Below, piece after piece: positions 3,599-24,973 of a DNA stretch of 64,000 nucleotides (its first letter is position 1; the number at the start of each line of letters is the position of its first letter). The stretch covers positions 774,089-838,088 of the forward strand of contig NW_003314330.1 in NCBI RefSeq assembly GCF_000143415.4. The letters are read 5' to 3'. The translations under genes and the position numbers were made by a program. The notes beneath the pieces are model-generated. The model saw only the letters and a list, made by a program, of their open reading frames with translations. It did no database searches and had not been told where the DNA came from. The DNA comes from Selaginella moellendorffii. Taxonomy: Eukaryota; Plantae; Lycopodiophyta.

Positions 3599-6088
3599 AT
3601 GGTGGATGCGGTTGTCTACAAGGGCCAGATCGCGTCGGAATCGATCATCGAGCAAGACCGGCTCGCGAGGCTTGTGAAATCTTGCAAGAATCTCGCAAGC
3701 GCCAGGCGAATCCACGCCCAGATCGCCGCGAACAAGCATGCCAGGGACAATCGTTACCTCGCGAATCTCCTCGTGGAGATGTATGCCAAGTGTGGGAGCC
3801 TGGACGATGCCAGGAACACGTTCCTCGCGATCCGGGAGCCCAATGTCTTCTCCTACAACATCGCCATCGCGGCGCTCGTCCGGGGCGGCGATCTGGCGGC
3901 GGCGCGAGAGATCTTCGACGCGATGCCGGAGAGGGCGACGGCGTCCTTCAACACGATGCTCCAGGGGTACGCGCAGAGGGGGGAAATCGCGAGCGCGGAG
4001 AGATTGTTCGCGGAGATCCCATCGCCGGACATTGTCTCGTGGAATTCGATGATAAGCATGTTTGCACAGGACAGGGATCTTGAGCGCGCGCAGCGGCTCT
4101 TTGACGCGATCCCGGAGAGAGATGCGCTCTCTGCGACGTCGATGATGCTCGCGTACTCCAATTGTGGGCAAGTTGATCTCGCCGAAGATCTCTACTGCTC
4201 TACTCCAGTTTGGGACGTGCTAATGGGTAACACCATAACATCTTGCTATGCCCAACATGAAAAATCTTTAGATGCTCAAAGAATCTTTGACACTATGCCC
4301 GAATGGGACATAATCTCTTGGAACAGCTTACTATCAGCAAATGCCCAAACTGGGAATTTTTTGTGCACTTGTCAAAAGTTTGACACTATGCCAAAGCATA
4401 ACCTAGTAACATGGAACACCCTAATAACCGCTAGTACGTATTCTGGTAACGTCGAATATGCTGAAGAACTGTTTCAAAGAATGCCCGAGCGTGATGAGGT
4501 AACTTGGAATGCTATGTTATCTGCATATGCCCATAACCGGCATCTGGAAGAAGCAAAACGTTTCTTCGAAGAGATGCCCTCAAAGAATGTGGTTGCGTGG
4601 AACACCATCATGCATGCTTACGTCGAAGAGGGTAAGCTTGATGAGGTAAAGGGATTGTTTGAGAGAATGCCTTCTCGAAATGCCGCTACTTGGACGTGCT
4701 TAATCGAAGCAAATGCCGGTAATGGGCACCTGGAAGATGCTCAGTCTGTCTTTGACAATATGCCAGAAAGAAACGTTGTGACATGGACGAGTCTGGTGGC
4801 AGCTTATCTATCAAACGGAAATTTAGGTGGCGGAAAAAAGGTGTTTGATAGCATGCCTGAAAGGAATGAGATCTCTTGGACAACAATCATAGTAGCGCTT
4901 GCCAAGAATGGGGATTTGGATCAGGCCAAGGATCTGTACGACCGGAGCCCGGCCAAAGACCTCGTGGCCCAAAATGCGATGGTGGCAGCGTATGCACGGT
5001 ACGGAAGGCTCGAAGATGCAACGAAGTTCTTTGATTCAATGCCTGAGAAAGACGTGACAACGTGGAATGCTCTGATGTCTGGCTACAAGAAGGAAGGGCT
5101 TTTGAAAGAGGCCGAGGAATTGTTTTCGAGAATTCCAAAGGGCGATGGAGTGTCATGGAACTTGATGTTGGCAGCTTACTCGCAGTGTAAGGGTCTAGAC
5201 AAGGCAAAGGAGATGTTTGATCGAATGCCCGAGAAAGATCTCTTCTCCTGGAACTCCATGATGGCCGCTTACTCCCAAAACGCTGGAATCGAAAATGTGA
5301 AAGACATCTTTGAGAAGATGCCATGCCGGGACACGGTGTCCTGGAACTGTATGATTCAAGCATATGCTCAAAGGTCTCAGCTAGAAGAGGCTTGCCAGGT
5401 ATTTGATGCCATGCCGGAGTTTCTCAAGGACGAGTTCTCGTGGACTTTGATGATCTCTGCGTTCTCCCAAGAAACAAAGATTGAGCAGGCCAAGCAAACG
5501 TTTGATTCCATGCCAAACAAGAATGTAGTGGCGTGGACGTCAATCGTGACTGCTTATGCCGACAATGGTCGAGTTTGCGGGGCCAAGAAACTCTTTGATT
5601 CCATGCCTAGAAAGGATTTGTGCTCGTGGAATGTGGTTGCTTCCATGTATGCTCGCTATGGTTTTTGTAGGGAAGCCATCGAGATCTTTAAGATCATGTG
5701 TTTGGAAGGATTTGATCCGGATGGAAAGACTTACGTGATTGTTCTTGCTGCTTGCTCCCACATTGGTCTAGTTCGCGAGGGTCTGCAAAAGTTTACATGC
5801 ATGGAGATGGATCATGGCATTCTGCCGCAAAAGGATCACTACAGAGCGCTTGCTGCGAGCTTTGGACGAGCAGGAGAGCTGAGGAACGCGAAAGACTTAA
5901 CGGTGGCCATGGATGATCCCGATGGACAGGCCTGGAGAGCGTTTCTCGGAGCTTGCTCTGTTCACTTTGATGTTCGGCACGGGGTTTCTGCTGCAAAACA
6001 TGCGCTTGTGGTAGGACCTGAAGCTGGCTCTGCTTACATTCTTCTTTCAAACACTCTGGCCTTGGAAAACACATTAAAAACAAGCTAG
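3599..6088 (+). CDS. PLS-class PPR protein dominated by 31-aa S/SS motifs, ending in a truncated E domain (no DYW); probable organellar RNA-editing factor
   Basis: Intronless 829-aa ORF with about 20 repeats such as PERNVVTWTSLVAAYLSNGNLGGGKKVFDSM, then VLAACSHIGLV...WRAFLGACSVH...AYILLSN and stop. Confidence 0.95.
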   Translation: MVDAVVYKGQIASESIIEQDRLARLVKSCKNLASARRIHAQIAANKHARDNRYLANLLVEMYAKCGSLDDARNTFLAIREPNVFSYNIAIAALVRGGDLAAAREIFDAMPERATASFNTMLQGYAQRGEIASAERLFAEIPSPDIVSWNSMISMFAQDRDLERAQRLFDAIPERDALSATSMMLAYSNCGQVDLAEDLYCSTPVWDVLMGNTITSCYAQHEKSLDAQRIFDTMPEWDIISWNSLLSANAQTGNFLCTCQKFDTMPKHNLVTWNTLITASTYSGNVEYAEELFQRMPERDEVTWNAMLSAYAHNRHLEEAKRFFEEMPSKNVVAWNTIMHAYVEEGKLDEVKGLFERMPSRNAATWTCLIEANAGNGHLEDAQSVFDNMPERNVVTWTSLVAAYLSNGNLGGGKKVFDSMPERNEISWTTIIVALAKNGDLDQAKDLYDRSPAKDLVAQNAMVAAYARYGRLEDATKFFDSMPEKDVTTWNALMSGYKKEGLLKEAEELFSRIPKGDGVSWNLMLAAYSQCKGLDKAKEMFDRMPEKDLFSWNSMMAAYSQNAGIENVKDIFEKMPCRDTVSWNCMIQAYAQRSQLEEACQVFDAMPEFLKDEFSWTLMISAFSQETKIEQAKQTFDSMPNKNVVAWTSIVTAYADNGRVCGAKKLFDSMPRKDLCSWNVVASMYARYGFCREAIEIFKIMCLEGFDPDGKTYVIVLAACSHIGLVREGLQKFTCMEMDHGILPQKDHYRALAASFGRAGELRNAKDLTVAMDDPDGQAWRAFLGACSVHFDVRHGVSAAKHALVVGPEAGSAYILLSNTLALENTLKTS

Positions 6089-6140
6089 AAAAGTTGTATA
6101 CTAATTTTAAGTGAATCCATCGCAGTTTAGGTTTGTAATC

Positions 6141-7880
6141 ATGGATTTGGGACACGCTCGACTATGGCGAGAGCTCGAGGATATCGAGAGGGAGCCGCTG
6201 GAAGGAATTCGTATCCACATCCATGATGGTAGTAACTTACAGCATATGTGTTTGGTTTTATCGCCCATTAGTGGTCCATTTGCGGGTCACAGGTTTCACT
6301 TGGATGTCCGTATTCCGAAATCCTATCCCGATCATCCTCCAAGGGTGACCATGCAATCCATGATCTGCCACCCTAATATCACCAGTGGCAATGTTCGTTG
6401 TGATGGTTTCGATTCGGAGTACACTCCCGCTTATAGGCTCAAGTACTTGTTCCTCCAGCTCTTGTGCTTGGTCTCGAGTGATTTCATCGCAAAGCGGGAA
6501 TCGGAACCCTATGACATGGTGGAGTATGCTGCAAAAGATTTGAGCTGGATGAACTGCAAGTACTATTGTGGGATTTGTGGGTTTTTCGATCAGGATCTCC
6601 CGGCTTTGAATCCGATAGATACGACTACAAAGGTGGCGGAGGAGAAAGTTGGTGGTATTTCAAGTGACCAGGCAGGAGAATCCGCGCATTCTTTGCTTGA
6701 AAAGCTGGATGATGATACTATGAGAGGGGTTTTGAGCAAAGTTAACGACCAGGCCATTATACAGTTGACGGTTGCATACGGGAGTATGAAAGAGTTTATG
6801 GAATCCAACAATGTGTTGCTCGAGAGGAATCTCTTCTGTTCCTACACACGCAAGTCTTTTGAGGAGGACGGGACCGTTCTGGGCCTCCGGATGGATTTCG
6901 AGAAAAATATTGTCACGGAGTTTGATCCCATCTCCTACGAGGCCTACTTCCAGAAGAACACCGGGAACTTTCTCCCACTGGCCNNNNNNNNNNNNNNNNN
7001 NNNNNNNNNNNNNNNNNNNNNNNNNNNNNNNNNNNNNNNNNNNNNNNNNNNNNNNNNNNNNNNNNNNNNNNNNNNNNNNNNNNNNNNNNNNNNNNNNNNN
7101 NNNNNNNNNNNNNNNNNNNNNNNNNNNNNNNNNNNNNNNNNNNNNNNNNNNNNNNNNNNNNNNNNNNNNNNNNNNNNNNNNNNCTTATGGAAGCTAACCA
7201 AGGAAGATCCGGCCCTGGCTCTCGAAATCCGCTCCAAGATCGACCAATTTACAAAAGATATCAAGTCCCGAGCAAGAGATTCGAATCCAAACCTGGGAGC
7301 CTTCCTCATGTATGCGCTGGTGGATCCGGAGGTGGATTGTAGCAAGCTCGGTGGCCTCGTCCTCAAGGAGATCCTCACGAGGAACGCACTCGCATATCTA
7401 AAGAAACATCCACACCTCGCGTATGTGGAGCCAAGCGACTATAACTCGGAGATACGACTCCAGCAAACGTTCCAGGTGTGCTCCGCCACCCTCAAAGCCC
7501 TGGTCTTCCAGGTCAACTTTGTTCATCTGGCCAAGACCGTTGACCCCGTGGAGCTGGATCGAAGGTATGGCTTCCCGGCAGAGGATGTGAGCACCAAGCT
7601 CCTCAAGCTCGCGAGAGACGCTGCGGCAGTGGAGAGCTGGAGTGATTTCCTCGCGCAGCTGAAAATCCCGGCCACCACCCGCAATGTTCTCGATCTCTTG
7701 AAGGCTACCATGAAGGCGAGCGAGAAGAATGGATACCATCGAGTTCCATACTCGCAGAACGAACTCTATTTGCTACGGAGTAAAGTGGAGCCGTCTTGTC
7801 CGGAGCCGGAGGCGTTCACGAGGCCTCGCAAGGTCTCTCGCAAGAAATACAGCTTCAAGCCGCTCAAACAGAAGAAGTAG
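6141..7880 (+). CDS. Ubiquitin-conjugating (UBC/E2) domain protein with long C-terminal extension; spans an assembly gap
   Basis: RLWRELEDIE...SGPFAGHRFHLDVRIPKSYPDHPPRV...HPNI...YTPAYRLKYLFLQL is a UBC fold. First ATG at 6141. Frame across the N gap is unverified. Confidence 0.8.
   Translation: MDLGHARLWRELEDIEREPLEGIRIHIHDGSNLQHMCLVLSPISGPFAGHRFHLDVRIPKSYPDHPPRVTMQSMICHPNITSGNVRCDGFDSEYTPAYRLKYLFLQLLCLVSSDFIAKRESEPYDMVEYAAKDLSWMNCKYYCGICGFFDQDLPALNPIDTTTKVAEEKVGGISSDQAGESAHSLLEKLDDDTMRGVLSKVNDQAIIQLTVAYGSMKEFMESNNVLLERNLFCSYTRKSFEEDGTVLGLRMDFEKNIVTEFDPISYEAYFQKNTGNFLPLAXXXXXXXXXXXXXXXXXXXXXXXXXXXXXXXXXXXXXXXXXXXXXXXXXXXXXXXXXXXXXXXXXXXLWKLTKEDPALALEIRSKIDQFTKDIKSRARDSNPNLGAFLMYALVDPEVDCSKLGGLVLKEILTRNALAYLKKHPHLAYVEPSDYNSEIRLQQTFQVCSATLKALVFQVNFVHLAKTVDPVELDRRYGFPAEDVSTKLLKLARDAAAVESWSDFLAQLKIPATTRNVLDLLKATMKASEKNGYHRVPYSQNELYLLRSKVEPSCPEPEAFTRPRKVSRKKYSFKPLKQKK
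6984..7183. other. Assembly gap (200 N)
   Basis: Run of N. Confidence 1.
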
Positions 7881-8380: not shown

Positions 8381-9943
8381 ATGTTAGTTCTAGACGGAGC
8401 TCTGGAAGAAGAGAGAGCTCCATCACCACTTCGAAGCAAAGATGGAGAAGAAATGTTCAAGGTACCTTTGTTCGCCAATCTCTCAGCGCAGCAGCGGATC
8501 ATCTTCTCAGCCAGCAGCAACAATTCAGCCAGGCGCTGCAGCGAGGCAGCGAGAGTTCTCCTCGGGAATGCAAGTCCTTCACAGCTGCAGGAGGCGAGTA
8601 GCTTTGGTGAGAATCAAAACTTCAAAGCTCCTGGCTCGGTACCTTTCAAATGGGAAGAACAACCCGGTAAGCCGAAGTCGCCGTCTTCGCTGAGCTACTC
8701 GAGCTCTCCCGGGAGCTCTCCACTGTCGTTTCTCCAGCCACCTCCTTGCCTTTCGATCGGAAGAACTCAGCAGCAGCAAGGACTGTCTCCTCGGCTCGCG
8801 GAGAGGATCAAAAACATCCTCCAGCTGCGTCTAGCTTCACCACTTCGATCGCCAATCTCACTCTCCAAGGACTCAAACTCCGCCGGAGAGATGAGATCTT
8901 CTCCAGTGAGTATACTCGATGCCAGCGTCTTTGGAGCCAGTCCAGAGTCGTATAGCTCGTCGTCACCGAGTAAAAGGTGTTCGTCGTCCTCAGCAGCGTC
9001 CTCGAGGGCTAACTTCCTGGAGCATCACGCCGTGGAGTCTCCGCTGAGCAGTGGAAGATTTAAGAAGCAGCTGAGTCTAGAGATCTGGGACCGGTCTTTG
9101 AGAGAGTCGTCCTCGTCGTCCACGGGCTGTGGTTTCTTCAAGAACATGCTGGGATGCTGGAAGCTGCAGCACAAGCTCGTCGACCATGACACTTGTCGTG
9201 GTTCTTCGCTGGAGAATTATCGCGAGCAGCACCACCAAGATTTCTCCAGCAGTGATCATGTCTTAGGAGGCGAGTTTGAGAGCTTCAAGGAGAGATCATA
9301 CGACGACGACGTCGACTGCGGCGGCGGGAGCTCCGAGTTTGATCACCAAAGCCGGTGTTTCTACGACGAAGTCGAAGCTCTAGAGATGGCTGAGGCCGAG
9401 ATGAAGCAACCGGCCGACGAAGTTCATGCTGTCGACGATGGAAAGTTTGCGACGTTTCCAGTCTCGGCGGCCTTCGTCTTCTCCAAGCCAGCGTTGAAAA
9501 AGAGTGGCGTGGTGGCCGATCGGAAGTTGTCCAAGAGAGTGAGGTTTCTCATCGAGGACTACTCGAGCGACGATAACAACGAGCCGCGAGAGAAGAGCGC
9601 CAAGAACAAGGCTGACGATATGTTTGACGACGCAATCTCCACCGAGGACGAAGGCTTCCAGCGGCCTGTACGATCAGTCATAAGGAGGAGGAAGAAGAAG
9701 AACTTGAATTCGAGTACCTCCAAGTTTCTACACTCTCCTCAGAGTCTAGAAGAGATCTCGATATCTCCAGGAGCTCAAGCGACGTTGGCCAGGTATGGAT
9801 CGTTCGAGAAAGCCTCGAGGGAGACTTTCCATGCCATCGCCACCTTCGACTTAGATGCTGTGGACTCGTCACCTGATCTTCAACCCATGAAAGATGTAGC
9901 TCAAAGGCCACCTCCCGGTGGTGTTCTTCGATTCACAGGATAA
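8381..9943 (+). CDS. Ser-rich, largely disordered DUF688-like protein
   Basis: Intronless 520-aa ORF with PGSVPFKWEEQPGKPK (DUF688 motif) and basic RRRKKK cluster. Confidence 0.75.
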   Translation: MLVLDGALEEERAPSPLRSKDGEEMFKVPLFANLSAQQRIIFSASSNNSARRCSEAARVLLGNASPSQLQEASSFGENQNFKAPGSVPFKWEEQPGKPKSPSSLSYSSSPGSSPLSFLQPPPCLSIGRTQQQQGLSPRLAERIKNILQLRLASPLRSPISLSKDSNSAGEMRSSPVSILDASVFGASPESYSSSSPSKRCSSSSAASSRANFLEHHAVESPLSSGRFKKQLSLEIWDRSLRESSSSSTGCGFFKNMLGCWKLQHKLVDHDTCRGSSLENYREQHHQDFSSSDHVLGGEFESFKERSYDDDVDCGGGSSEFDHQSRCFYDEVEALEMAEAEMKQPADEVHAVDDGKFATFPVSAAFVFSKPALKKSGVVADRKLSKRVRFLIEDYSSDDNNEPREKSAKNKADDMFDDAISTEDEGFQRPVRSVIRRRKKKNLNSSTSKFLHSPQSLEEISISPGAQATLARYGSFEKASRETFHAIATFDLDAVDSSPDLQPMKDVAQRPPPGGVLRFTG

Positions 9944-10138: not shown

Positions 10139-12032
10139 TCAAACCAGTAATGGCTTGCACGTAGAAACCTGTTTGTTCTTCCTGTGAGTCACTGCTGCTG
10201 TGAAGTTCGAGTGAAAAAGCTTTTCAAGCCGGCAGGAATGAGCTCCAACGAGTTCCGTGACTTGAGGCTCGTCTCGCGGCACAATCGCGTAGTCATCCCC
10301 ATACTCGTCAAGGCCCTCTTCCAGGAGTTGCCAGAGCATTGCCCCGGCACACGCTTCTCCGTTTCGTGCCGAGTCGAAGGCCGCGTCATACATTGCCTTT
10401 AAGAGCTCAAGCCGGTGTCTCGTGCTAGATTTCGTTTTGAGCCCAAATTCTGTGACCAGCACCGGCTTTTGCAATCTCAAAGCACCGTCTTGGACGTGCG
10501 TATCAACCCATTTAGAGAAGCCTTTGAGCTGTTCCTCGAAGCTCACCTCGGGCATCCTGAAAAAAGCAGGCTACGTGAAACTCTGATCAAAGAAAAAGAG
10601 AGACAGTCTCACCATATATCCGGATATGCATGAATCGAAGCGAAATCTATAGTCGAGAGAAGGTGGTTGCGTATGAAATCCGAGCCAAGGAAATCCGCCC
10701 AGTGTCCTGGATTGGCTACTAAGCTGTCGGGACTCCAACTATTGTAGAATCCTTCCAGTCCAACAGTTAGCAGGTGCTTGCTGTCCAGGGACTTGACGTA
10801 CACGGACATTTCTTCGATCCAAGTCTGCGTCCAAAACTCTAGTATTTTAAGTGAAACTTTGCAAAAGTAAAGAACCTGTAGTGTGTTTCCCGAGGGATCA
10901 ATGATGCAGCGTGGTTCGTTCATGAGCTCCCATGCGAAGATGGCTGGCTCGTCTTTGTAGGCCACCCCGGTAATGCTGTTCACTCTTGTTAGTATTTTCT
11001 GCCACAAGGAAAAACAACAAGATCTCAACGAAACGACTGGCTGCATTGATCTACCTTGACGTGAGATTTGTAGTAGTCTTTGATGGTTGGATCGGAGAAG
11101 AAAGTGTCGTTGCTATAGCCGACGTCGGCACTGGCTTGACGAGCCCAGTAAACGTACTGTCCTTTGCCACCGAATGCTTCCAGATTATTTGTCAGGCTTA
11201 GCAACAACCTGATGTTGCGACGACGGGCTTCAACGATTACATAATCCAGAGCCTGCCACAAGACAAAGAAGACTTAGAACACTTCTCTTCAAAAGAAAAA
11301 AGAAAAAAGTTTTCAATGTAGAAAAACCAAAAACGATCCTAAGAGGGAGAAGAAGAAGTGTTCAGTAGGACAATTCTCTTGAAATGAAAAGAAACACTTC
11401 TATGACGAAAATCCATCCTAAGAAGGAGAAGAAAGAAAGTGCTATGAAAAAAAACCAAAACGAAGCATCCATCCTAAGAACAAGAAGAGGAAGAAAAGAT
11501 CAACTTAGAACACTTATCTTGAAATGCAAAGAAACACTTCTATGACGAAAAATCCATCCTAAGAAGAAGAAGAAAAGCTATAAGAAGAAGAAGAAAATCT
11601 CAGGAGCTACTTAAAACACTTTTCTAGGTAGAAAAAAGAGAAAAAGAAACTTCTAAAGAGCAGCACTACCTATAGTACCTTGAAAACGTCCTCGTCGTAG
11701 TGGCCAGGAGATCTTTGCAATGCATGGTAGCCAGCATCGTTGAAAGCCCAAGTTCTCACAAGGTTGAGCCCCATGCCGGCTCCATCGTCGAGGATGGATC
11801 TCACATTGGACCGGCTGAGCCACTCCACCGCCTCGCTCATCATCCAGTAGGAATTCCAGCCATTGATGTAGAAAGGCCGGCCATCCACAAAGAACTGCGT
11901 GCCATCCCTTCGCACAAACCCCATCTCCGGGAGCTTGATGGGCAGCCGGATATTGCCATTGAGGATGAGGTATCCAATCCCTATAATCCCCAGGATCGCA
12001 ATCGCTGTGTAGCTCGCATAGTTGTTTACCAT
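10139..12032 (-). CDS. MAN: Endo-1,4-beta-mannanase (GH5 subfamily 7); exons 12032-11679, 11252-11055, 10998-10876, 10824-10613, 10556-10139
   Basis: [32 protein letters not shown] (acid/base Glu), HAYPDIW, VLVTEFG (nucleophile). N-terminal hydrophobic anchor. Four in-frame GT-AG introns. The last exon end is uncertain. Confidence 0.93.
11273..11655. repeat. Degenerate purine-rich tandem repeat in mannanase intron 1
   Basis: TCTTGAAATGxAAAGAAACACTTCTATGACGAAAA(A)TCCATCCTAAGAA at about 11377 and 11517. ATCCTAAGA occurs four times. Confidence 0.75.
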
Positions 12033-12439
12033 GCTCGATCCACCGATCTAGCCCCCGGAATCTGAGAGCTCAAGAGCTGGAATCCAAAGCTCTTGATCGA
12101 CCTGCAATACCTGGCCGCGCTTTGTAGAATTCCCTTCCCGGAGAGATGGCGACCTCGCAGCACACTCGCATTTGACTAGTAGAGAGATCGATCGATGCGC
12201 GAATGGATCGCGGACGAAAACTTCCCTCGCGATGTTACGTTTCATCAGCAATGAAGAGCGTACGATGACGGTGTTTAGTACGGAATATGAGGTCCAAGGC
12301 TCGATTCTCCTTAGCACAGCACTAGGGCAAGTGCAAAGTGGGTGGTCTTGGTTCGATTCCTGCGAGTAACAAGTAAATTTCTAGGGTTCTTCGTGAGGGA
12401 GCCGCAAGAGGTGAGTCCGCCGCCTCGCCGATTGATACA

Positions 12440-14337
12440 ATGGCAGGTCGGGGCAGGATGCGAGTCCCTCAGCAAGGAGTCGCAATCTTGCGGCCTCACG
12501 GCAGGGGCTCCATGGTCGTGCCGCCTCCGCCGATCATCGAGCAGAAGCTTGCGGCCCAGCACCTGGAAATCCAGCGCCTGCTGACCGAGAACCAGCGATT
12601 CGCGGCGACGCACGTCGCGCTGAGGCAGGATGTGGCGCAGCTCCGCCAGATTATCTCCCAGAACGACGCCAAGATGTCGGCATTGGAGAGGGAGCTGGAG
12701 CAGGCGAGGAGCGAAATCAAGACGGTGAATTCGCATCGCCAAGAGCTCCTCCTCCAGGCACAGCAGATGACACAGGATTTGCATCGCGCTCGATCGGATG
12801 CCCAGCAAATGGCCGTGATGAGGGCCGAGAATGACACGCTCCGCCAGGAGCTCCAGAGGCTCAAAGCTACTTACGAGCCAAGCAGTGGCAGTGCTGGCGG
12901 TGGTGGTGGCGGTGGTGGTGGCGGTGGTGGTGGAGTTTCTACTTCTGCTAGTGGCAAGGATCATCAAGAACAGCTCTCCAAGGAGGTGGAGAAGCTTCGC
13001 GCAGTGGCAGCATCAGTGAATTATCCAGTGGCTTCTTCCAGCGCTTCATACGTCGCCAATGGGAGTGTGGCCGCCACTCCTTCCAGCGCTCCTGTGGAGA
13101 CATGGACGACACACTACGCTCCAAATGGCTCTCTCTTCTACTACAACACAGTCACGGGTGTAACGCAGTGGGAGAAGCCGGCCTCGCTCGCCGCAAGCCA
13201 GGCCGGGCAGGAGCTTCATTCCAATCCACAAGCCGCGCTTCAGCAAACCATGCACCAAGTTCTCATCCAGCAGCATCAAGCTGCTGCCGCAGCCGCCGCC
13301 GCCGCCGCGTATCAGTTGAGTGGTCACTCCGCCACTCCGGGCCTCCAGCAATTCCCACAGCAGCTGCTCTACGCTCCTCAGCCATCCTCCCAGATCACAG
13401 GAGCTCCAGGACCAGGGACCTCGACCAACTTACCCGGTACAAGTCAGCCATCTACAAGCCAAAACCCGTTGTCATTCCTGGCGCGATCCTCAGGTGCGTC
13501 TTTTCTTGTTTTTGATTCTCTCTAAGCATCGACTTCAACCATTTTCAGGAGTCGTTAACCCTTCACTCAAGCCCGACGGTGTTTCTTCACGGCAATCTCC
13601 CTCAGCTGCTAACAGCCCCTCTAGGCCACAAGGTGAGTGCTTTCTGTGAGGATCTAGCTACTTCTCATCCTTTTCGTGTTTTTTCTTCTTTTTCCAGGTG
13701 CGACGTTGTCTGTGTATGGGATCTCTGCCGACTACCGGGACTCGGACTTGGTGGACCTATTCAAGCCTTACGGGAGTGTTTTATATGCCAAAGTCGCTAC
13801 CGCCAAAGAAATGGCTGCGGGCCAGCCGTGTGGTAAGCCAAGCCATTTTTTTCTGTTCTGTAGTTTCTTTTTTTCTCTGTCCTTCATTCATGCGAGCTTC
13901 CAGCTTCTCGACTTTCAGTGTTCTTCTATAGCCACTTTCGTGTCCGTCGTTCGCTTCGCTCTAGCTAGAAATGATCCGAGACGCTTACCTCTATCCGAGC
14001 TTGGCCAAAACCAACGAGCTTTTCCCTTTTTCCCTGACTTGGAAGAAGCCTCTCTCCTTGAAACAATTTCCTGCCAAGTGCTTGCAGTTCGTCCTCGTTA
14101 TTTACTTCTACAGTACCGATTGATCGCATCAGATTTCTTATTTCTCGTTTGTTTGCAAATCTCCGGTTTACCTCAGGAACTGTGACAATGGACACGAGAC
14201 GGTCTGCCGAGGCAGCCATGACTGCCATGAATGGAGTGTCGATCTCTGGCAGTGCACTTGAGATAAAACTCCAGCGTGACCAAGACGTTGATTTTCCTTC
14301 CAAACAGAAAAGTGGTGCTTATCGATCTTCTTACTAA
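12440..14337 (+). CDS. FLX-like coiled coil + WW domain + Q/A-rich low-complexity region + degenerate CELF/BRUNO-type RRM fusion; exons 12440-13493, 13549-13632, 13698-13832, 14177-14337
   Basis: EQKLAAQHLEIQRLLTENQRFAATHVALRQD (FLX family). WTTHYAPNGSLFYYNTVTGVTQWEKP (WW). PQGATLSVYGI...LFKPYGSVLYAKV...AAMTAMNGVSISGSALEIKLQRD (RRM3-like). All three introns are GT-AG, phase 1, and keep the frame. Confidence 0.85.
12896..12933 (+). repeat. (GGT/GGC)n microsatellite encoding poly-Gly linker
   Basis: Direct reading of sequence. Confidence 0.9.
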
Positions 14338-15799
14338 CGCTCGCGCGATTGTTTCTCTTTTAACTCTCTATATTTCTCTTTGCTCTTTCTGCGTCTCCGT
14401 TTTTCTTTTCTACGAAGCTAATCCGTTTATCCAGATTCTTTTGCTGCTCTAGTTTTGTGCAGGCCTTGCCTTCTCTATGATGTTTTTGCTGGTTTTTACA
14501 GGCTTTCCTTTGTGAAGTAAAGATTCACGTTGGTTTTTAACTTCCGTCTTCTATTAAAGACTCGGGCTCCTGTCCTTCGGCAAGTTGCCGGCTGCAAAAC
14601 TATAGGGAGACGATCCGTCATACCCTCTTGGAACCAGGGCTTCTAATGGAAGCTTGCCAACACCAGGAGATTCTACTTCTACATGGTTCCTAAGGTGGAT
14701 CGACCATCGTCATTTGCCGGAGTAATCCCTTGGGAAGTTGGATGAGTCATTTGTTTTGGGAGAGCCGAACTAGAGTACCTCCAAGTGAAGAGTGTACGTG
14801 TGAATTCAATACGTAACTCAAGATATGAAGCTATCCTTAGTGGATACTCTGGCTGTTCTCTGGGAAGTATAGTGTGCAGCCTTTTGGAATTGCACTTAAG
14901 TCAAGCCTGGACCGATCCATGAATGAAGCATTTGCCCATGTTCTTAGTTTGGCTTTCATTTAGTGAAGCAGTACCTCGTGCCAGCTGGTTGTTTTTCTAC
15001 TAGATTATTAATAAAATTTACCTGGAAAACGTACCACTTTGGGTCAAAAGCTTTTCATTATAAACCCTTAGTAATAAGTAAAACTGCATATTTATATAAG
15101 GGGTTTAGTTTATAGATCTTGGTTAGCCTGTTAAAGGCTAATTTGAAATTTACCTTTATATTAATTTTAGAGTATCTAAAATTTTTAATTAATCATAAGC
15201 CATTTTAAATTTTAACATTACCAATAAGATTAAATATAAAGAATCTTTAAATATTCTCTTATAATTCAAATAGACCTTACATTAATTATTCAAATTCGAG
15301 CTAAGTGCTATGCCTTAATTAAGCCCTTATCTAAATATGAAATGATCATATGAGATGAGTTCTTAAACAAACAATCACAAAAGTCATGAGTATTGAAGTT
15401 GACTCCTTTTAAAGCTTTAGAACTTTGGCTACCATGAGGGATAATATAACCCCAATCCCAATAGGGAGGAAGAGATTAGAAGAAATAGATAGCCAGATAA
15501 GCAAGGAATGGAATGAAGGATGGAGAGGAGAAGGAAGAAGTACAGAGAAGATAATAGCATGCCCTAAGCTCACGTTGTCCCTCCTTATAATTGGCATGAA
15601 GATTAAGCCGTTAACAAGCCATCCCTCCTTAAAACTTTGGTCCTCTGGAGTTGCGACTTCCCCACCAAGGTCATAGAATTGTTCATCCATCACCCAGGTA
15701 TCCTCATTGTAATCCAAGCCTTCCTAGCGTATTCTGTGCAATGGAAAATGAGGTCAATTCTTATCTATAGCTGATGTGTGATCTCAATCTTCCTTTAGC

Positions 15800-20080: not shown

Positions 20081-23000
20081 CTATGTTTTATTACTATTTT
20101 CATACTCCGTGACAAGCTCACGAGCATGTGTAAGATTACTAAGAGGTTCCCAAGTTGATTCACAAGTCGGGTAACCTTTCCACTTAACTAGATATTCCTT
20201 CGCACGAGCCCGTCTCCGGAACCGGGAATCCAATATAGTTTCGACTTCGTACTCAGGTTCACCATCCACAACATCTGGTGGTGGACGAATCTCCCCTTGA
20301 CGTGCAACATCCATAGTGTAAGGAGCCAATAGATTGGCATGAAATACATTATGAACATTGGACATCTCCGCAGGTAGGTCCAACCGATAGGATACATCAC
20401 CAATGCGTTTTAGCACCCGATAGGGTCCAACATATCTCGGCAAGAGCTTCCGAGACAAAGAACCCTTAATGTTCAAGTTTTGGGAAGATAGCCACACCTG
20501 ATCTCCCACTTGATAGGATACATCCCGACGATGCTGATCCTTATCACGTCGATACCTATCTTGAGCTTTGCCCATCGCCTCAGTTGCTCTAGACCAACCT
20601 TGACGTAGCTGCTCCGCATAAGTCTCAACGGCTGGGACCAACACCTCGGACATTGGTTTCGGTACAACAATCTGTTGAGGAACCCCACGAGCATTCCCTT
20701 GCAGCATCTCCCATGGAGAACAGCCTATAGCGCTGTGAAACGTGTTGTTATAACATATTTCTGCTGTATCCAAATGCTCAACCCAGTCGCGTTGGTCCGC
20801 CGCGACATAGTACCGCAGATAATCCTCAACTTGAGCATTTACACGTTCGGTCTGCCCATCAGTCTGAGGATGATAAGCCGTACTAAACTTTAACTTGGTA
20901 CCAAACAACTGGAACAGTGTGCCCCAAAACTTCCCCGTAAATCTTGAATCTCTATCCGAGATCATCACTTCAGGAAGACCACGAACCCGCACTACTTCAT
21001 GGAAAAAGAGCTTTGCTGCTTGTTTCGCATTCACTGTTCCCACAGTTGGAATGAAGTGTGCAATCTTCGACAATCGATCCACAACCACCATCAAAGTATC
21101 ATAACCCTTAGACTTCGGCAAGCAAGTGACGAAATCAAGTGTCACACTTTGAAATGGCCATGCCGGTGCTGGAATGCACTGCAACTTCCCAGCCTGCTTC
21201 TCAGCTTTGCGCTTACATTGCTGGCATATAGGGCAGGAACGGATATAGTCCGCTACATCACCTTCCATACCAGACCAGAAAAATCCCTTTTTCAACGAAG
21301 CTAGCGTTTTTCGCTGTCCACCATGTCCCGCTGCTGGAACATCATGATGTTCCCGCAAAAATAACTGCTGCAAATCCTTAGAGGGAAGATACAATCTTTC
21401 TTGCTTATAGAATATAAGCCCATCCCGAACTGAGAAGTGAAGTTTCGCATTAGTGCGACTAGCAACTTTCGCTGCTTCGCTACTAGGGCTCTGCTTCGAC
21501 AACTCCGCACGGCGTAAGATTGTCTTCGCCAATGGATCATTTCCATACGAAGCCCGAACATCTTCTAACCAGTCCGAACTGATTGCCGATATTGCCCGGA
21601 ATTGAGCTTGACGACTCAACGCATCCGGAACAATATTGTCTTTACCAGGTTTATATATGATTTCAATATCATATCTAGCAAGCTTTTCTTGCCAACGAGC
21701 CTGCTTCGGCGTAAGCTTAGGCTGCGTAGCAAAGTAGCTTAGTGTGTTACTATCTGTATAAACCTTGCTGTGTCCACCCAAGTAGTGTCTCCAGTGTTCC
21801 AGGGCCGACACTATAGCAAACATCTCTTTCTCATGCGTTGGCCATCTTCGTTGGGTTTCATCCAATTTCTTGGAATAGAACGCAACGGGACAACCATGTC
21901 GCCTTAGCGTAACACCAACCGCTTTGTCACAATCTTGCTGTAACACGGCACCAATAGCATATCCAGATGCATCACAATGCACTTCGAAGGGTTTATCAAG
22001 ATCTGGGATCCTGAGAACAGGAACCGTAGTCAAGATCTCCTTCAACCGTACAAAAGCACGCTGACAAGCTGGTGTCCAATGAAACGGAATGCTACTCTTC
22101 GTCAACTCAGTTAACGGAAGAGCAATCCTTGCAAAATTGCGGACAAACTTGCGATAGTATCCCGCCAAACCGAGAAAGGAACGAACATCTGATACAGTGG
22201 TCGGGATTTCCCAAGACTTCACCGCTTCCACTTTCTTTGGATCGACTTCAATCACGCCACCACCAACTATATGTCCGAGAAAGTTTACGCGCAATTGACC
22301 AAAAGCACATTTACTTTCCTTAGCATACAGTTTGTGTTCGCGCAACTTCTGAAACACCAGCTCCAAGTGTTTCAAATGATCCTCCAACGTTTCGCTGAAG
22401 ACTAGAACATCGTCGATGTATAGGACAACAAATGCGTCCAAATAATCTCCGAATATTCTATCCATCATAGTGCTGAACGTTGCCGGAGCATTGCATAACC
22501 CGAATGGCATGACAAGGAACTCATAAGATCCGTACCGAGTCTTAAAGGCTGTCTTCTCCACATCCTGATCCGCCACCCGTATCTGATGATACCCGGACCG
22601 CAAATCAAGTCGTGTAAAATACTTAGCCTTTAAGAGTTGGTCAAACAAGTCATCAATGCGAGGCAAAGGATAACTGTTCTTGACCGTGATCTTATTGAGT
22701 GCCCGATAGTCAATACACATCCTCATGGTTCCATCCTTTTTCATAACAAAAAGGATTGGTGCTCCATAAGGTGACTTGCTGGGTCGGATATGACCTTTGT
22801 CAAGAAGCTCCGTGAGTTGCTTCTTGAGTTCAGCCATCTCCTTGATGTTCAACCGATACGGAGCTTTCGTAGGTGGTTTAGAACCCGGAATAACCTCAAT
22901 CCGATGATCAACCTCACGGCTAGGGGGTAGCCTTGGTGGCAAATCCTTCGGGAAGATATCCTGATTCTGCGCCAACAACTCCAATATCTTCTTTGGTACA

Positions 23001-24814
23001 GGATCAACCCCGTCGCCAATTCGAACAGAGTCATCCACACTCTCCACTTCCATCACTTGAACCCAAAAGGTCCGACATCCCCTCTTAGCTGCTTTTTGAG
23101 CGGCCCTCGCAGTCAGGAACTTTCCATCCCAATCCTTTGAGGAACGCTTTTGCAACTGGAAGGACACATCGGGTCGTCCTTCAGACTTCAACGTGATGCG
23201 ACTTTGTCCAGCACCATAAATCCCTTTTATATACTTGTTGAAGAAATCCATACCAAACACCATCTGAAAATCTGGTATCTTCAACACTACCAAGTCCACT
23301 CTTTCTTTCCACTTGGATATCTTTATTGGAACATCACTCACAAACTTTCTGGCTACTTGCCCACCTTCCGCAAACCGGAAGTGCATAGGCGACATTTGCT
23401 CAGCATTCAATCCTAACAACTTAACTAAGTCTTCGGATATCACGCTGTGCGTAGCTCCCGTGTCAATCATCACTCGGATTCGGTGTCCACGGACAAAGCC
23501 TACCAGATACATCAACGGATCAGTGTTTGCATTGACTGCAAGAAAAGCTTGAGGAAAGCAACGAAAGTTACTCACCTCTTCTTCCTCATAGTCTGCATTG
23601 ACCAACTCGTCAACCCCTTCAGCTTCATCACCACCGTCTTCCCTCATGACATTAACTCGAGACCTTGTCTTATGCTTGTTGGGACAATCCGAGGACCTAT
23701 GTCCTGACTCTCCACAATGGAAGCAATGACCCACACTACCCGTTCCGCTAGGAGCAGGTTTTGCAGGTTGCTGCTGCTTGTACCCACCAGGAGGAGGAAC
23801 AGAGGGCCTAGGACCAGAAGAAGCTGCTGGTGGTCTCCAACCACCACCACCTTTGTTAACCGTTGCTTGTGAGCCTCCAGGGCGGAACCTACTCTCCACC
23901 CTCTGTTTCCGATCACCTTGTTTATTCCCAGAATTCCTATTCTTGTCCGAGTTACCAGCATACGGTTGCTGATATTGTTCCATGAGTGAGTGACTAAAGG
24001 CAACTTGCTGCGCTGCCTCCTTACACTCCAGATACGTCTTCGGCTTAAACTTCAAAATCTCATTGCGAGAGAGTGAACTTAAACCCTCCAGAAAATAACT
24101 CCGAGCATCTTCGTCACTCATATTTGCAATCATAATGCGCTTCTGAGCAAACGCATTAACGTAATGCATGAGATCCCCTCGCTGCTTTAACCGCCGCAGC
24201 TCCGCGCGAAGTCTGAGACCAAGATCATCCGGCAAGTATTCCTTACGGATACGAGATCGCATCTTGGTCCAACTTCTAGTCTGCCCTTTTTCAGCACACA
24301 CTTGGCGCCACCAAGTTTTGGCATGATCGGTGAGAAAGGATTGCGCGCACGCAACTTTCGTACGATCATCTACGTCTGCCGCTATGAAGTAGTTCTCCAT
24401 ATCGTAGACCCAGTCTTCCAAAACCTGATAGTCCCGCATGCCTCTGAAGTTGGGTGGTTTCGGAGGCTTGAACTTTGAAACTCGTGCAACCGGGGGCGGC
24501 TGCAGAACTTCATCGTCCTCAGAACTTGAAGAGGAGTCTGGTTGCTTAGGCTTAGCTGGTTTAGCTGCCTCAGCTTCTTTCTTCCTCTTCTTGTTCTCCT
24601 TCTTCAATTTGCGAATCTCCTTTCGCAAATTCTCGATCTCGACTTCCTGAGCCGTACGCTGCAACGCCGCAGCATTTGGCTCTTCCTCTTCTGACTCAGC
24701 CTCAGCCTCTTCCGCAGCATCTCTAGCAGGAGTTTCCTCCTCTCGATTCGCCCGTCTAGAGGTTTCAGCATCATCAACACGGTTCCGTTTCACCATCCCG
24801 CTAGCTGCATGCAT
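20081..24814 (-). CDS. gag-pol: Gag-Pol polyprotein (Gag, CCHC knuckle, protease, RT, RNase H, integrase, chromodomain)
   Basis: [14 protein letters not shown]; MIDTGA; LYIDD; HCDASG; HH-CC and DDE integrase; GPY; [10 protein letters not shown]...[18 protein letters not shown]. First in-frame ATGs at 24814 and 24796. Confidence 0.96.
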
Positions 24815-24973
24815 GCCTCTATCAGTAACTGAACATGCATACAACGTTCTTACCGAATGGTGCAATCCAACTAATCCTACACAGGTCGCTTCGGATCTAC
24901 TAGAAAAGTCTCTGCGTATGCAACTTGAGTCAGAAAATCCGACAAAAGTTGGATAGGAATCGCTGAGACAATT

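What the first reader, a model, noticed from the sequence alone, without database searches (positions are those of the whole stretch)
12440..14337. FLX coiled coil fused to an FCA-like WW domain, a prion-like Q/A tract and a BRUNO-type RRM: a possible one-protein FLL2-FCA module
Seen: exon 1 alone encodes an FLX coiled coil, a poly-Gly linker, a WW domain (W...YYNTVTGVTQWEKP) and a Q/A/P-rich region, so the FLX-WW join cannot come from wrong splice prediction. Three clean phase-1 introns add a CELF/BRN RRM3-like domain. Established: angiosperm FLX/FLL proteins are stand-alone coiled coils. Arabidopsis FLL2 promotes phase separation of FCA, whose WW binds the PPLPP motifs of the 3'-processing factor FY. 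Inference: this is a Rosetta-stone fusion, a condensate scaffold for polyadenylation control in a non-flowering plant. I do not recall this architecture being described.
Basis: partly seen in the sequence, partly recalled or inferred. Interest (0 to 1): 0.85.

Follow-up and report, generated by a model that had tools for sequence, protein, structure and literature searches.

The report
FLX coiled coil fused to FCA-type WW-RRM
This expressed Selaginella gene joins a FLX-type coiled coil to a WW domain, a disordered Q/A-rich stretch and one RRM; it belongs to an old, undescribed family of seed-free plants whose WW-RRM half most resembles the rear half of an algal three-RRM FCA relative, so it hints that the FLL2-FCA partnership of flowering plants is ancient.

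Summary
A four-exon gene (12440-14337, +) encodes 477 aa: FLX-type coiled coil, poly-Gly, WW, Q/A/S/P-rich disordered linker, one CELF-RRM3-like RRM. All three GT..AG introns appear as joints in transcript contigs from four studies. One contig runs from the WW region to the 3'UTR.

It is the other allele of Selaginella moellendorffii SELMODRAFT_414635, which RefSeq names "CUGBP Elav-like family member 1".

It is not a lineage oddity. The same architecture occurs in the ferns Psilotum, Pteridium and Ceratopteris and, as a gene model, in the alga Spirogloea. Lycopods have copies without the RRM. I saw none from seed plants.

The WW-linker-RRM(-RPY tail) half is colinear with the rear half of Chara braunii CBR_g38484. 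The front RRM pair of that protein groups with FCA (96/91). By score alone the WW is no closer to FCA (25 bits) than to PRPF40A WW1 (32.5 bits).

The Selaginella RRM has lost all three RNA-stacking aromatic residues.

The "Rosetta stone" idea is partly supported by evolution. Control of polyadenylation through FY is untested.

The parts
12373..12439 (+). 5' untranslated region (lower bound of the transcript start)
   Evidence: The longest 5' transcript contig starts at 12373. There is no depth at 12303-12403 in three of four runs.
12440..13493 (+). Exon 1. It encodes aa 1-351: Pro-rich N-terminus, FLX coiled coil, poly-Gly, WW and the first part of the disordered linker.
   Evidence: A single ORF. 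The donor GT is at 13494. The joint is seen in four runs.
12509..12538 (+). Pro-rich motif (SMVVPPPPII) just before the coiled coil. A PPL/PPP motif stands at this place across the FLX family.
   Evidence: A role as a WW ligand is only an idea; the complex prediction gave no answer.
12533..12874 (+). FLX-type coiled coil, first helix (aa 32-145), with the family block IIEQKLAAQH.EIQRLL.ENQRFAATHVALRQ
   Evidence: The model shows a helix at 32-145 with pLDDT 93-95. Homology to FLX and FLX-like proteins is and the alignment.
12896..12934 (+). Poly-Gly run of 13 residues (9 in the other allele). It replaces part of the FLX C-terminal block.
   Evidence: A 12-nt allelic deletion is seen in transcript contigs.
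12956..13018 (+). Second helix, the remnant of the FLX C-terminal block (..KEVEKLRA..)
   Evidence: The alignment columns carry the family consensus EVEKLRAEL. The model shows a helix at 167-188 of P0001.
13103..13180 (+). WW domain (aa 222-247)
   Evidence: Pfam WW 35.3 bits. Three strands with pLDDT about 91. Nearest WWs are listed.
13205..13610 (+). Q/A/S/P-rich disordered linker (aa 256-372; Q15, A15, S15, P11 %), with an Ala-10 run at 13280-13309. It spans intron 1.
   Evidence: Composition. pLDDT is below 50 over most of it. Q-rich linkers of 40-198 aa stand at the same place in all family members.
13494..13548 (+). Intron 1 (55 nt, GT..AG, phase 1)
   Evidence: The joint is in four runs.
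13549..13632 (+). Exon 2 (84 nt, linker)
13633..13697 (+). Intron 2 (65 nt, GT..AG, phase 1)
   Evidence: The joint is in three runs.
13698..13832 (+). Exon 3: first half of the RRM (strand 1, helix 1, strand 2), ending inside RNP1
   Evidence: RRM_1 profile positions 2-32, 21.4 bits.
13833..14176 (+). Intron 3 (344 nt, GT..AG, phase 1). It is retained in a minor isoform that cuts the RRM in half.
   Evidence: The joint is in four runs. Separate contigs at 13804-14205 keep the intron. RefSeq isoform X1 (P0057, 484 aa) reads into it.
14177..14337 (+). Exon 4: second half of the RRM, a short tail ending ..AYRSSY, and the stop codon
   Evidence: RRM_1 profile positions 44-69. The stop is at 14335-14337.
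13700..14277 (+). CELF-RRM3-type RRM (aa 381-458, split by intron 3), with degenerate RNP2 (LSVYGI) and RNP1 (QPCGTVTM)
14338..14601 (+). 3' untranslated region (the extent seen in contigs)
   Evidence: Contigs reach 14526 (X1) and 14601 (X2).

Best explanation
What it is (shown). This is the Selaginella member, second haplotype allele, of a conserved streptophyte protein family that I did not find described. A FLX-type coiled coil is fused to a module made of a WW domain, a Q-rich disordered linker, one CELF-RRM3-type RRM and, in most members, a tail ending ..RPY. The family occurs in ferns and lycophytes and, as a gene model, in the zygnematophyte Spirogloea. I did not see it in seed plants.

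Origin (inferred from colinearity and trees). The WW-linker-RRM3-tail module most resembles the rear half of a three-RRM protein of the FCA lineage, still whole in Chara braunii. If so, angiosperm FCA (RRM1-RRM2-WW) lost RRM3, and the fusion family kept the rear half and gained a FLX coiled coil.

How it probably works (inferred, not shown).
- The long helix pairs or bundles with itself or with other FLX-like proteins. Several WW domains and disordered Q/A-rich linkers are then displayed together.
- The WW is of the Prp40/FBP11/FCA kind that binds PPLP-type proline motifs. It docks a proline-rich partner of the co-transcriptional RNA-processing machinery. FY/WDR33 is the obvious candidate by analogy with FCA.
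- The result is a multivalent nuclear scaffold or condensate component.
- The Selaginella RRM has lost all three RNA-stacking aromatic residues. It more likely serves protein contacts or weak, non-canonical RNA contacts. Spirogloea and two fern-like members keep canonical RNP motifs and may still bind RNA.
- Retention of intron 3 gives a minor isoform without a whole RRM.
For: - Gene and splicing.
- Public allele with the same exon structure.
- Domains.
- Model: helix 32-145 (pLDDT 93-95), WW and RRM confident, linker disordered.
- Same architecture elsewhere: Psilotum P0059, Pteridium P0063, Ceratopteris P0067, two transcript-derived proteins P0060 and P0061 (P0060 on intronless 2.3-kb contigs in 34 runs), and Spirogloea P0213. 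The Spirogloea N-terminus is 37% identical to Macleaya FLL2 over 161 aa, E 4e-21.
- Module homology: Spirogloea WW to RRM aligns as one 203-aa stretch with Chara P0255 (37%, E 3e-32). Selaginella WW is 49% and RRM3 37% identical to the same protein. A shared ..RPY end appears in the family, Chara and Gloeochaete, and CELF2 ends ..KPY.
- Trees: the family is one clade on WW+RRM3 (98/96), inside a clade with Chara and Gloeochaete (100/98). Its RRM lies outside the plant BRN plus animal CELF clade (98/86). Chara RRM1-2 groups with FCA (96/91).
- Background: FCA binds FY, and the coiled-coil protein FLL2 interacts with FCA and is needed for FCA condensates and function (PMC11962161, read).
Against: - No functional data exist for any member.
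- The WW alone does not single out FCA. It scores 25 bits to the FCA WW, 32.5 to PRPF40A WW1 and 35 to the Chara WW.
- The pairing of the family with Chara in particular is weak (57/38).
- On the FLX domain the fused proteins fall into three groups. One origin is merely not rejected (AU p 0.18).
- The Spirogloea fusion rests on one gene model with an odd middle stretch. A sister model (P0138) lacks the FLX part, so two neighbouring genes may have been merged there.
- The Selaginella copy is the most divergent member: long branches in every tree, a shortened coiled coil, degenerate RNP motifs and no RPY tail.
- Absence from seed plants and bryophytes rests on not seeing them among the best hits, not on a complete survey.
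Confidence: 0.55

Rival explanations
1. It is a single-protein equivalent of FLL2 plus FCA: it binds RNA through its RRM, recruits FY through the WW and forms condensates that control poly(A) site choice in a non-flowering plant.
For: The FLX coiled coil, the FCA-lineage WW and the Q-rich disordered linker are in one expressed protein. FLL2-FCA-FY biology is established in Arabidopsis (PMC11962161).
Against: FCA's RNA-binding RRM1-RRM2 pair is absent. The only RRM has lost RNP2 position 2 and RNP1 positions 3 and 5. The WW is not closer to the FCA WW than to Prp40-type WWs. Chara keeps a whole FCA-lineage protein, so the fusion is a paralogue, not a replacement. FY binding is untested.
Confidence: 0.2
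2. It works on the FLX side of the family's biology. It is a transcription-coupled scaffold like FLX and FLX4 in the FRIGIDA complex, and its WW docks on the RNA polymerase II CTD or on CTD-phosphatase or splicing partners, as Prp40/FBP11-type WWs do, rather than on 3'-end factors.
For: The best solved WW relatives are PRPF40A WW1, WBP4, TCERG1 and Prp40. FLX and FLX4 form a complex with the CTD phosphatase CPL3 (abstract of PMC9176254). The FLX tree does not place the fused proteins with the FLL2 clade in particular, apart from the long-branched Spirogloea.
Against: The WW comes as a colinear unit with an FCA/CELF-type RRM3 and tail, which points to RNA-processing ancestry. No FF domains or other Prp40 features are present.
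Confidence: 0.13
3. The Selaginella copy is a decaying or re-purposed relic. The family was functional in the ancestor, but here the RRM, the tail and part of the coiled coil have degenerated, and the protein does little or something unrelated.
For: It has the longest end branches in all trees. It lost the RNP aromatic residues and the RPY end. About 17 residues of the coiled coil are deleted and a block is replaced by poly-Gly. Intron-3 retention is seen in contigs and in RefSeq isoform X1.
Against: Both alleles keep an intact 468- and 477-aa frame and differ mostly by low-complexity indels. Both are expressed in runs of several studies. The WW and RRM folds are predicted with high confidence.
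Confidence: 0.1
4. The fusion is an artefact of assembly or gene prediction, for example two genes merged.
For: None for this window. It is a fair worry only for the Spirogloea model.
Against: FLX, poly-Gly, WW and the linker lie in one uninterrupted ORF. Overlapping transcript contigs run from 12436 to 14526 with all three splice joints in four studies. Independent fern transcripts have the same architecture.
Confidence: 0.02

Closest known systems
FLX / FLX-LIKE (FLC EXPRESSOR; Arabidopsis FLX and FLL1-4, including FLL2)
   Same: The N-terminal 190 aa carry the family's conserved coiled-coil blocks. Identity to named FLX-like proteins is 35-46%, with E down to 1e-21. The Pro-rich motif before the helix is also shared.
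   Different: Seed-plant members are stand-alone proteins of 280-430 aa. This one carries WW, linker and RRM behind the coiled coil. Its coiled coil is shortened and partly replaced by poly-Gly. In place of the Gly/Tyr/Asp-rich tail of FLL2-type proteins it has a WW-Q-RRM module.
FCA (flowering time control protein; RRM1-RRM2-Q-WW-Q)
   Same: A PPLP-class WW is followed by a Q-rich disordered region. The module is colinear with the rear half of Chara CBR_g38484, whose RRM1-2 pair groups with FCA.
   Different: It has no RRM1-RRM2. It has an RRM3 that angiosperm FCA lacks. Similarity to the FCA WW itself is modest (25 bits).
CELF / Bruno-like (BRN1, BRN2) RNA-binding proteins
   Same: The RRM is most like CELF RRM3 by sequence (52 bits) and by fold (target TM 0.85). 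Family members share a C-terminal ..PY end with CELF. RefSeq even names this protein 'CUGBP Elav-like family member 1'.
   Different: It has one RRM, not three. The RRM lies outside the starred plant BRN plus animal CELF clade. The RNP aromatic residues are lost in Selaginella. CELF and BRN proteins have no WW and no coiled coil.
RRM-RRM-WW-RRM proteins of Chara, the glaucophyte Gloeochaete and protists (Theileria, and MMETSP and other transcript proteins); Babesia and Neospora have shorter RRM-WW-RRM forms
   Same: They have the same WW-linker-RRM3(-RPY) order. Neospora shares a 15-residue identical stretch in the WW (YYNTVTGVTQWEKPA).
   Different: They carry N-terminal RRMs where this family carries the FLX coiled coil.
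Prp40 / PRPF40A (FBP11) WW domains
   Same: PRPF40A WW1 is the best solved WW relative (32.5 bits). It is the same ligand class as the FCA WW by established knowledge.
   Different: There is a single WW and no FF domains. The resemblance is at domain level only.

Membership tests
FLX / FLX-like | Conserved N-terminal coiled-coil block (..EQKLA.QH.EIQRL..ENQRLA.TH..LRQEL..) within a long helix | tested here: met
   Helix 32-145 has pLDDT 93-95.
FLX / FLX-like | Conserved C-terminal block of the domain (..YE.EKK....EQ.QAMEKN...MAREVEKLRAEL) | tested here: inconclusive
   Only ..KEVEKLRA.. remains. The preceding part is replaced by poly-Gly, and about 17 residues of the middle are missing.
FLX / FLX-like | Stand-alone coiled-coil protein, as in seed plants | tested here: not met
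   It is fused to WW and RRM.
FLX / FLX-like | Binding to FRIGIDA-complex partners or to FCA | not testable with these tools
   No partner sequences of this plant were at hand.
FCA | Two N-terminal RRMs (RRM1-RRM2) | tested here: not met
   The only RRM is C-terminal.
FCA | WW domain flanked by Q-rich, prion-like regions | tested here: inconclusive
   The WW is present, with a Q/A/S/P-rich disordered linker behind it. The region in front is Ser/Ala-rich, not Q-rich. No prion-likeness predictor was run.
FCA | WW and neighbouring module descended from the FCA lineage | tested here: inconclusive
   It is colinear with the Chara FCA-lineage protein and lies in the same starred clade (100/98). The sister pairing is only 57/38. 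The WW scores 25 bits to FCA against 32.5 to PRPF40A.
FCA | WW binds the PPLPP motifs of FY | not testable with these tools
CELF / Bruno-like | Three RRMs with a divergent linker between RRM2 and RRM3 | tested here: not met
   A single RRM.
CELF / Bruno-like | RRM3-type domain | tested here: met
   CELF2 RRM3 52 bits, E 6e-13. Target TM 0.85 to 4ljm.
CELF / Bruno-like | Canonical RNP1 and RNP2 aromatic residues for RNA stacking | tested here: not met
   RNP2 is LSVYGI and RNP1 is QPCGTVTM, against LFIY.. and KCFGFVSY in CELF2.
Prp40 / FBP11 | Tandem WW domains followed by FF domains | tested here: not met
   One WW and no FF hit in Pfam.

The most novel reading that the evidence does not exclude
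The family may be a fossil record of a partnership between FLX coiled coils and FCA that is older than land plants, if the Spirogloea model is a true fusion. On this reading FCA began as a three-RRM, CELF-type protein with a WW in its linker, as Chara still has. A duplicate's rear half (WW-Q-RRM3-PY) was welded to a FLX coiled coil before land plants arose. Seed plants then lost the fused gene, so that FLL2 and FCA work together only in trans. The fused protein would then be a natural minimal scaffold for studying how a coiled coil, a WW and a Q-rich linker build RNA-processing condensates.
Probability: 0.35. Interest if true: 0.75.

Novelty: new variant of a known kind. Interest (0 to 1): 0.6.

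Why it matters
In Arabidopsis the link between the coiled-coil protein FLL2 and the RNA-binding protein FCA was found genetically. How the two touch is still being worked out (PMC11962161).

A natural protein family that joins a FLX coiled coil to an FCA-lineage WW-RRM module gives independent evolutionary support for that partnership, if the origin proposed here holds. The family is kept in ferns and lycophytes, and apparently in a zygnematophyte alga.

It dates the link to before flowering existed. That points to a general role in RNA processing rather than in flowering.

It offers a compact, testable scaffold in transformable ferns.

It also suggests that FCA is a CELF-type protein that lost a third RRM. 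This is a simple statement about a much-studied gene, and I did not find it in the papers searched.

Tried and rejected
- WW region search among 5.8 billion proteins. It gave only the protein itself and a Neospora RRM-WW-RRM protein. The word index and the database-wide E-values make a 30-residue domain nearly invisible, so it says nothing about FCA.
- No named FCA came out of the searches. I used an unnamed Logan protein (P0257) that the Atlas places with FCA clusters at 0.98. Only one FCA-type sequence therefore stands in the trees.
- RRM3-only tree. A chlorophyte row turned out to be an RRM1 and acted as a stray long branch. The family's place next to Chara is unresolved there.
- FLX-domain tree. 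The backbone is unresolved. Single origin of the fusion is neither shown nor rejected (AU p 0.18).
- Complex prediction of the WW with the protein's own Pro-rich N-terminus: no answer. It is not evidence either way.
- Look-up of the Diphasiastrum protein P0002 on contigs: not on record. For the related lycopod gene P0078 no RRM exon was found within 10 kb downstream.
- Atlas search with the fern-like member P0060: no usable hit.
- Literature searches for FLX-like with WW, for FLX or FCA with Selaginella, and for FCA with bryophytes or charophytes found no description of this architecture.
- Earlier notes of this scan: nothing on this gene.
- Considered and rejected: a merged gene model in this window; derivation of the RRM from land-plant BRN genes.
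Full report
**1. What is in the window**

On the + strand an ATG at 12440 opens a 1054-nt exon. Three more exons follow: 13549-13632, 13698-13832 and 14177-14337. The introns are 55, 65 and 344 nt, all GT..AG and all in phase 1. The spliced frame is 477 aa.

Exon 1 is one uninterrupted ORF.
- Pfam finds a WW domain at aa 222-247 (35.3 bits against a cut-off of 26.9).
- Exon 3 matches RRM_1 profile positions 2-32 and exon 4 matches positions 44-69, so the two pieces are the two halves of one RRM.

**2. It is transcribed and spliced as read**

Contigs of four runs from four studies were laid on 12000-15000 (3001 letters, within the operators' limit). All three introns appear as GT..AG joints. 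One 1010-nt contig runs from 13047 through all three joints to 14526. Contigs 12436-12996 and 12967-13076 overlap it. Three of four runs have no depth at 12303-12403, between this gene and its upstream neighbour. The runs are labelled only as guessed RNA. The spliced joints themselves show that they derive from RNA.

Lower-depth contigs at 13804-14205 keep intron 3.

**3. Identity of the gene**

The best database match is Selaginella moellendorffii SELMODRAFT_414635 (P0001, 468 aa, 96% identical, same C-terminus). UniProt calls it 'WW domain-containing protein'. RefSeq calls it 'CUGBP Elav-like family member 1 isoform X2'. Isoform X1 (P0057) is the intron-3-retained form.

The differences are mostly low-complexity indels: Gly run, Ala run, one CAG, and 9 nt. 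Both versions occur in the same runs. The window therefore carries the other haplotype's allele. On P0001 the joined RRM scores 40.4 bits.

**4. The FLX part**

Exon 1 matches proteins named FLX, FLC EXPRESSOR and FLX-like 1, 2 and 3, from ferns, gymnosperms and angiosperms. E-values run from 1e-21 to 1e-10 in a database of 5.8 billion proteins. Identity is 35-46% over the coiled coil. Those proteins are 280-430 aa and carry no other domain.

An AlphaFold2 model built on the family alignment gives:
- one long helix at aa 32-145 (pLDDT 93-95);
- a second helix at 167-188;
- a confident WW;
- a disordered stretch at 256-366;
- a confident beta-alpha-beta-beta-alpha-beta RRM.

Compared with its kin, the Selaginella coiled coil lacks about 17 residues in the middle. 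Poly-Gly stands where the others have the ..YE.EKK..EQ.QAMEKN.. block.

**5. It is a family, not a one-off**

An exhaustive HMMER search of 1.84 billion representative proteins, with cluster look-ups, found the whole architecture in:
- Psilotum nudum (P0059, 665 aa);
- Pteridium aquilinum (P0063, 574 aa);
- Ceratopteris richardii KP509_37G045200 (P0067, 543 aa);
- two proteins from transcript contigs of unnamed samples that nest among ferns (P0060 and P0061; P0060 on intronless 2.3-kb contigs in 34 runs);
- Spirogloea muscicola SM000029S10554 (P0213, 476 aa).

The Spirogloea N-terminus is 37% identical to Macleaya FLL2 over 161 aa (E 4e-21).

Copies with FLX and WW but no RRM occur in Diphasiastrum (P0002, P0071), in the lycopod gene for P0078, and in Pteridium (P0073). 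For the P0078 gene no RRM exon lies within 10 kb downstream.

No seed-plant protein with this architecture appeared among the best hits. This is an observation from the hit lists, not a complete survey.

Caveat: the Spirogloea case is a gene model with an odd middle stretch. A sister model (P0138) starts just before the WW.

**6. Where the WW-RRM half comes from**

*Same module in other proteins.* The same searches found proteins with RRM1-RRM2-WW-RRM3 in the glaucophyte Gloeochaete, in protist transcriptomes and in Theileria. Shorter RRM-WW-RRM forms occur in Babesia and Neospora. A three-RRM protein of this kind also occurs in Chara braunii (CBR_g38484, P0255, 649 aa).

*The Chara front half is FCA-like.* Its RRM1-RRM2 pair is 64% identical over 183 columns to an FCA-type protein (P0257: RRM1-RRM2-Q-WW, no RRM3). 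The two group together (96/91), apart from plant BRN. The Atlas places P0257 with 'flowering time control protein FCA' clusters at 0.98.

*The Chara rear half matches this family.* It reads WW, Q-rich linker, RRM3 and the end ..GYRPY, colinear with the fusion family.
- Spirogloea aligns to it as one 203-aa stretch (37%, E 3e-32).
- Selaginella matches it with the WW at 49% and RRM3 at 37% identity.
- Most family members end ..RPY or ..WPY, as do Chara and Gloeochaete. CELF2 ends ..KPY.

*Trees.* In a joint WW+RRM3 tree the fusion family is one clade (98/96) with Spirogloea at its base. It lies inside a starred clade (100/98) with Chara, Gloeochaete and two WW-RRM proteins. The pairing with Chara itself is weak (57/38). 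On RRM3 alone the family lies outside the starred plant BRN plus animal CELF clade.

*Reading.* I take the module as the rear half of an FCA-lineage, CELF-type protein, and angiosperm FCA as a form that lost RRM3. This is inference from colinearity and trees with a single FCA-type sequence.

**7. Is the WW 'FCA-like'?**

By score alone, no. With the Selaginella WW as query:
- family WWs score 34-51 bits;
- Neospora scores 38.7;
- Chara scores 35.3;
- the FCA-type WW scores 25.2;
- PRPF40A WW1 scores 32.5 in the PDB search.

A domain of about 30 residues cannot carry a tree. The argument for FCA ancestry rests on the whole module, not on the WW.

**8. The RRM**

It is closest to CELF2 and CELF1 RRM3 and to Bruno among solved structures (52, 51 and 46 bits). 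The model superposes on ETR3 RRM3 (target TM 0.85, rmsd 2.7).

The Selaginella RNP2 reads LSVYGI and its RNP1 reads QPCGTVTM. Chara has LFVFRI and RGFGFVSF. RNP2 position 2 and RNP1 positions 3 and 5 are not aromatic here. By established knowledge of RRMs, the aromatic residues at these three positions stack on RNA bases.

Spirogloea, P0060 and P0061 keep canonical motifs. Psilotum, Pteridium and Ceratopteris are intermediate. Intron 3 falls inside RNP1.

**9. The linker**

aa 256-372 is 15% Q, 15% A, 15% S and 11% P, with an Ala-10 run, and is predicted disordered. Q-rich linkers of 40-198 aa stand at this place in all members, and a 57-aa linker with 39% Q in Chara. Whether the linker is prion-like was not computed.

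**10. How it most likely works (inference)**

- A long coiled coil oligomerises.
- It displays WW domains of the PPLP-binding class, disordered Q-rich linkers and an RRM-fold domain.
- Such a protein is a multivalent scaffold of the kind that builds nuclear RNA-processing assemblies.

In Arabidopsis, FCA binds the 3'-end factor FY. The coiled-coil protein FLL2 interacts with FCA and is required for FCA condensates and function (PMC11962161). The fusion family fits that picture as a retrospective Rosetta stone.

It is a paralogue of FCA's rear half, not FCA itself. The Selaginella member probably does not bind RNA in the canonical way.

A rival is a transcription-coupled role on the FLX/FRIGIDA/CTD-phosphatase side. 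The WW class does not exclude that.

**11. Novelty**

The proteins are deposited as hypothetical or misnamed entries. Four full-text searches found no description of an FLX+WW(+RRM) architecture or of a three-RRM FCA in charophytes, and a follow-up reading of one listed paper added nothing. The library does not hold most subscription journals. I rate it a new variant of known kinds, of moderate to good interest.

**12. Limits**

- No FY, FCA or other FLX-like sequences of Selaginella were available.
- Only one FCA-type sequence is in the trees.
- Absence from bryophytes and seed plants is not established.
- The complex prediction gave no answer.

Noticed in passing
window 13804-14205 (intron 3, 13833-14176): A minor transcript form keeps intron 3 (contigs in three runs). 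RefSeq models it as isoform X1 (P0057, 484 aa). It reads through into the intron and lacks the second half of the RRM.
   Followed up: partly
P0255 (Chara braunii CBR_g38484, 649 aa): The Chara protein whose RRM1-RRM2 pair groups with FCA (96/91, 64% identity) also has a CELF-type RRM3 and a ..GYRPY end behind the WW. FCA may therefore have begun as a three-RRM, CELF-like protein.
   Followed up: partly
P0105, P0095, P0103, P0109, P0139, P0175, P0166, P0053: RRM-RRM-WW-RRM proteins occur in a glaucophyte, in protist transcriptomes and in Theileria. Shorter RRM-WW-RRM forms occur in Babesia and Neospora. Neospora shares a 15-residue identical stretch of the WW with Selaginella.
   Followed up: partly
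window 12509-12538 and the same place in FLX-family proteins: A conserved proline motif (PPL.GP, PPLLP, LPPP or PPPP) stands just before the FLX coiled coil in fused and stand-alone members. It looks like a possible ligand for PPLP-class WW domains, FCA's included. The one complex prediction gave no answer.
   Followed up: partly
L007:10001-62689 (GCA_029204225.1 CM055096.1): A lycopod FLX-WW paralogue (P0078) spans 52.7 kb for 539 aa, with FLX and WW in separate exons. In Selaginella they share one exon. No RRM exon lies within 10 kb downstream.
   Followed up: yes
window 20081-24865 (-): One open frame of 1594 aa carries gag, protease, reverse transcriptase, RNase H, integrase and a chromodomain. 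It is an apparently intact Ty3/gypsy chromovirus-type retrotransposon.
   Followed up: no
window 3599-6088 (+), 6111-7880 (+), 8381-9943 (+): Upstream neighbours: a PPR-repeat protein (829-aa ORF), an ORF with a ubiquitin-conjugating (UQ_con) domain, and an ORF with a weak DUF688 match.
   Followed up: no
window 11670-12372: A divergently transcribed gene on the - strand starts at 12032, and its transcript contigs reach about 12256. This leaves only about 120 bp without depth before the first contig of the FLX-WW-RRM gene, so the two may share a promoter region. From memory its first exon looks like the start of a GH5 endo-beta-mannanase, but Pfam gave no hit at E 1e-5.
   Followed up: no
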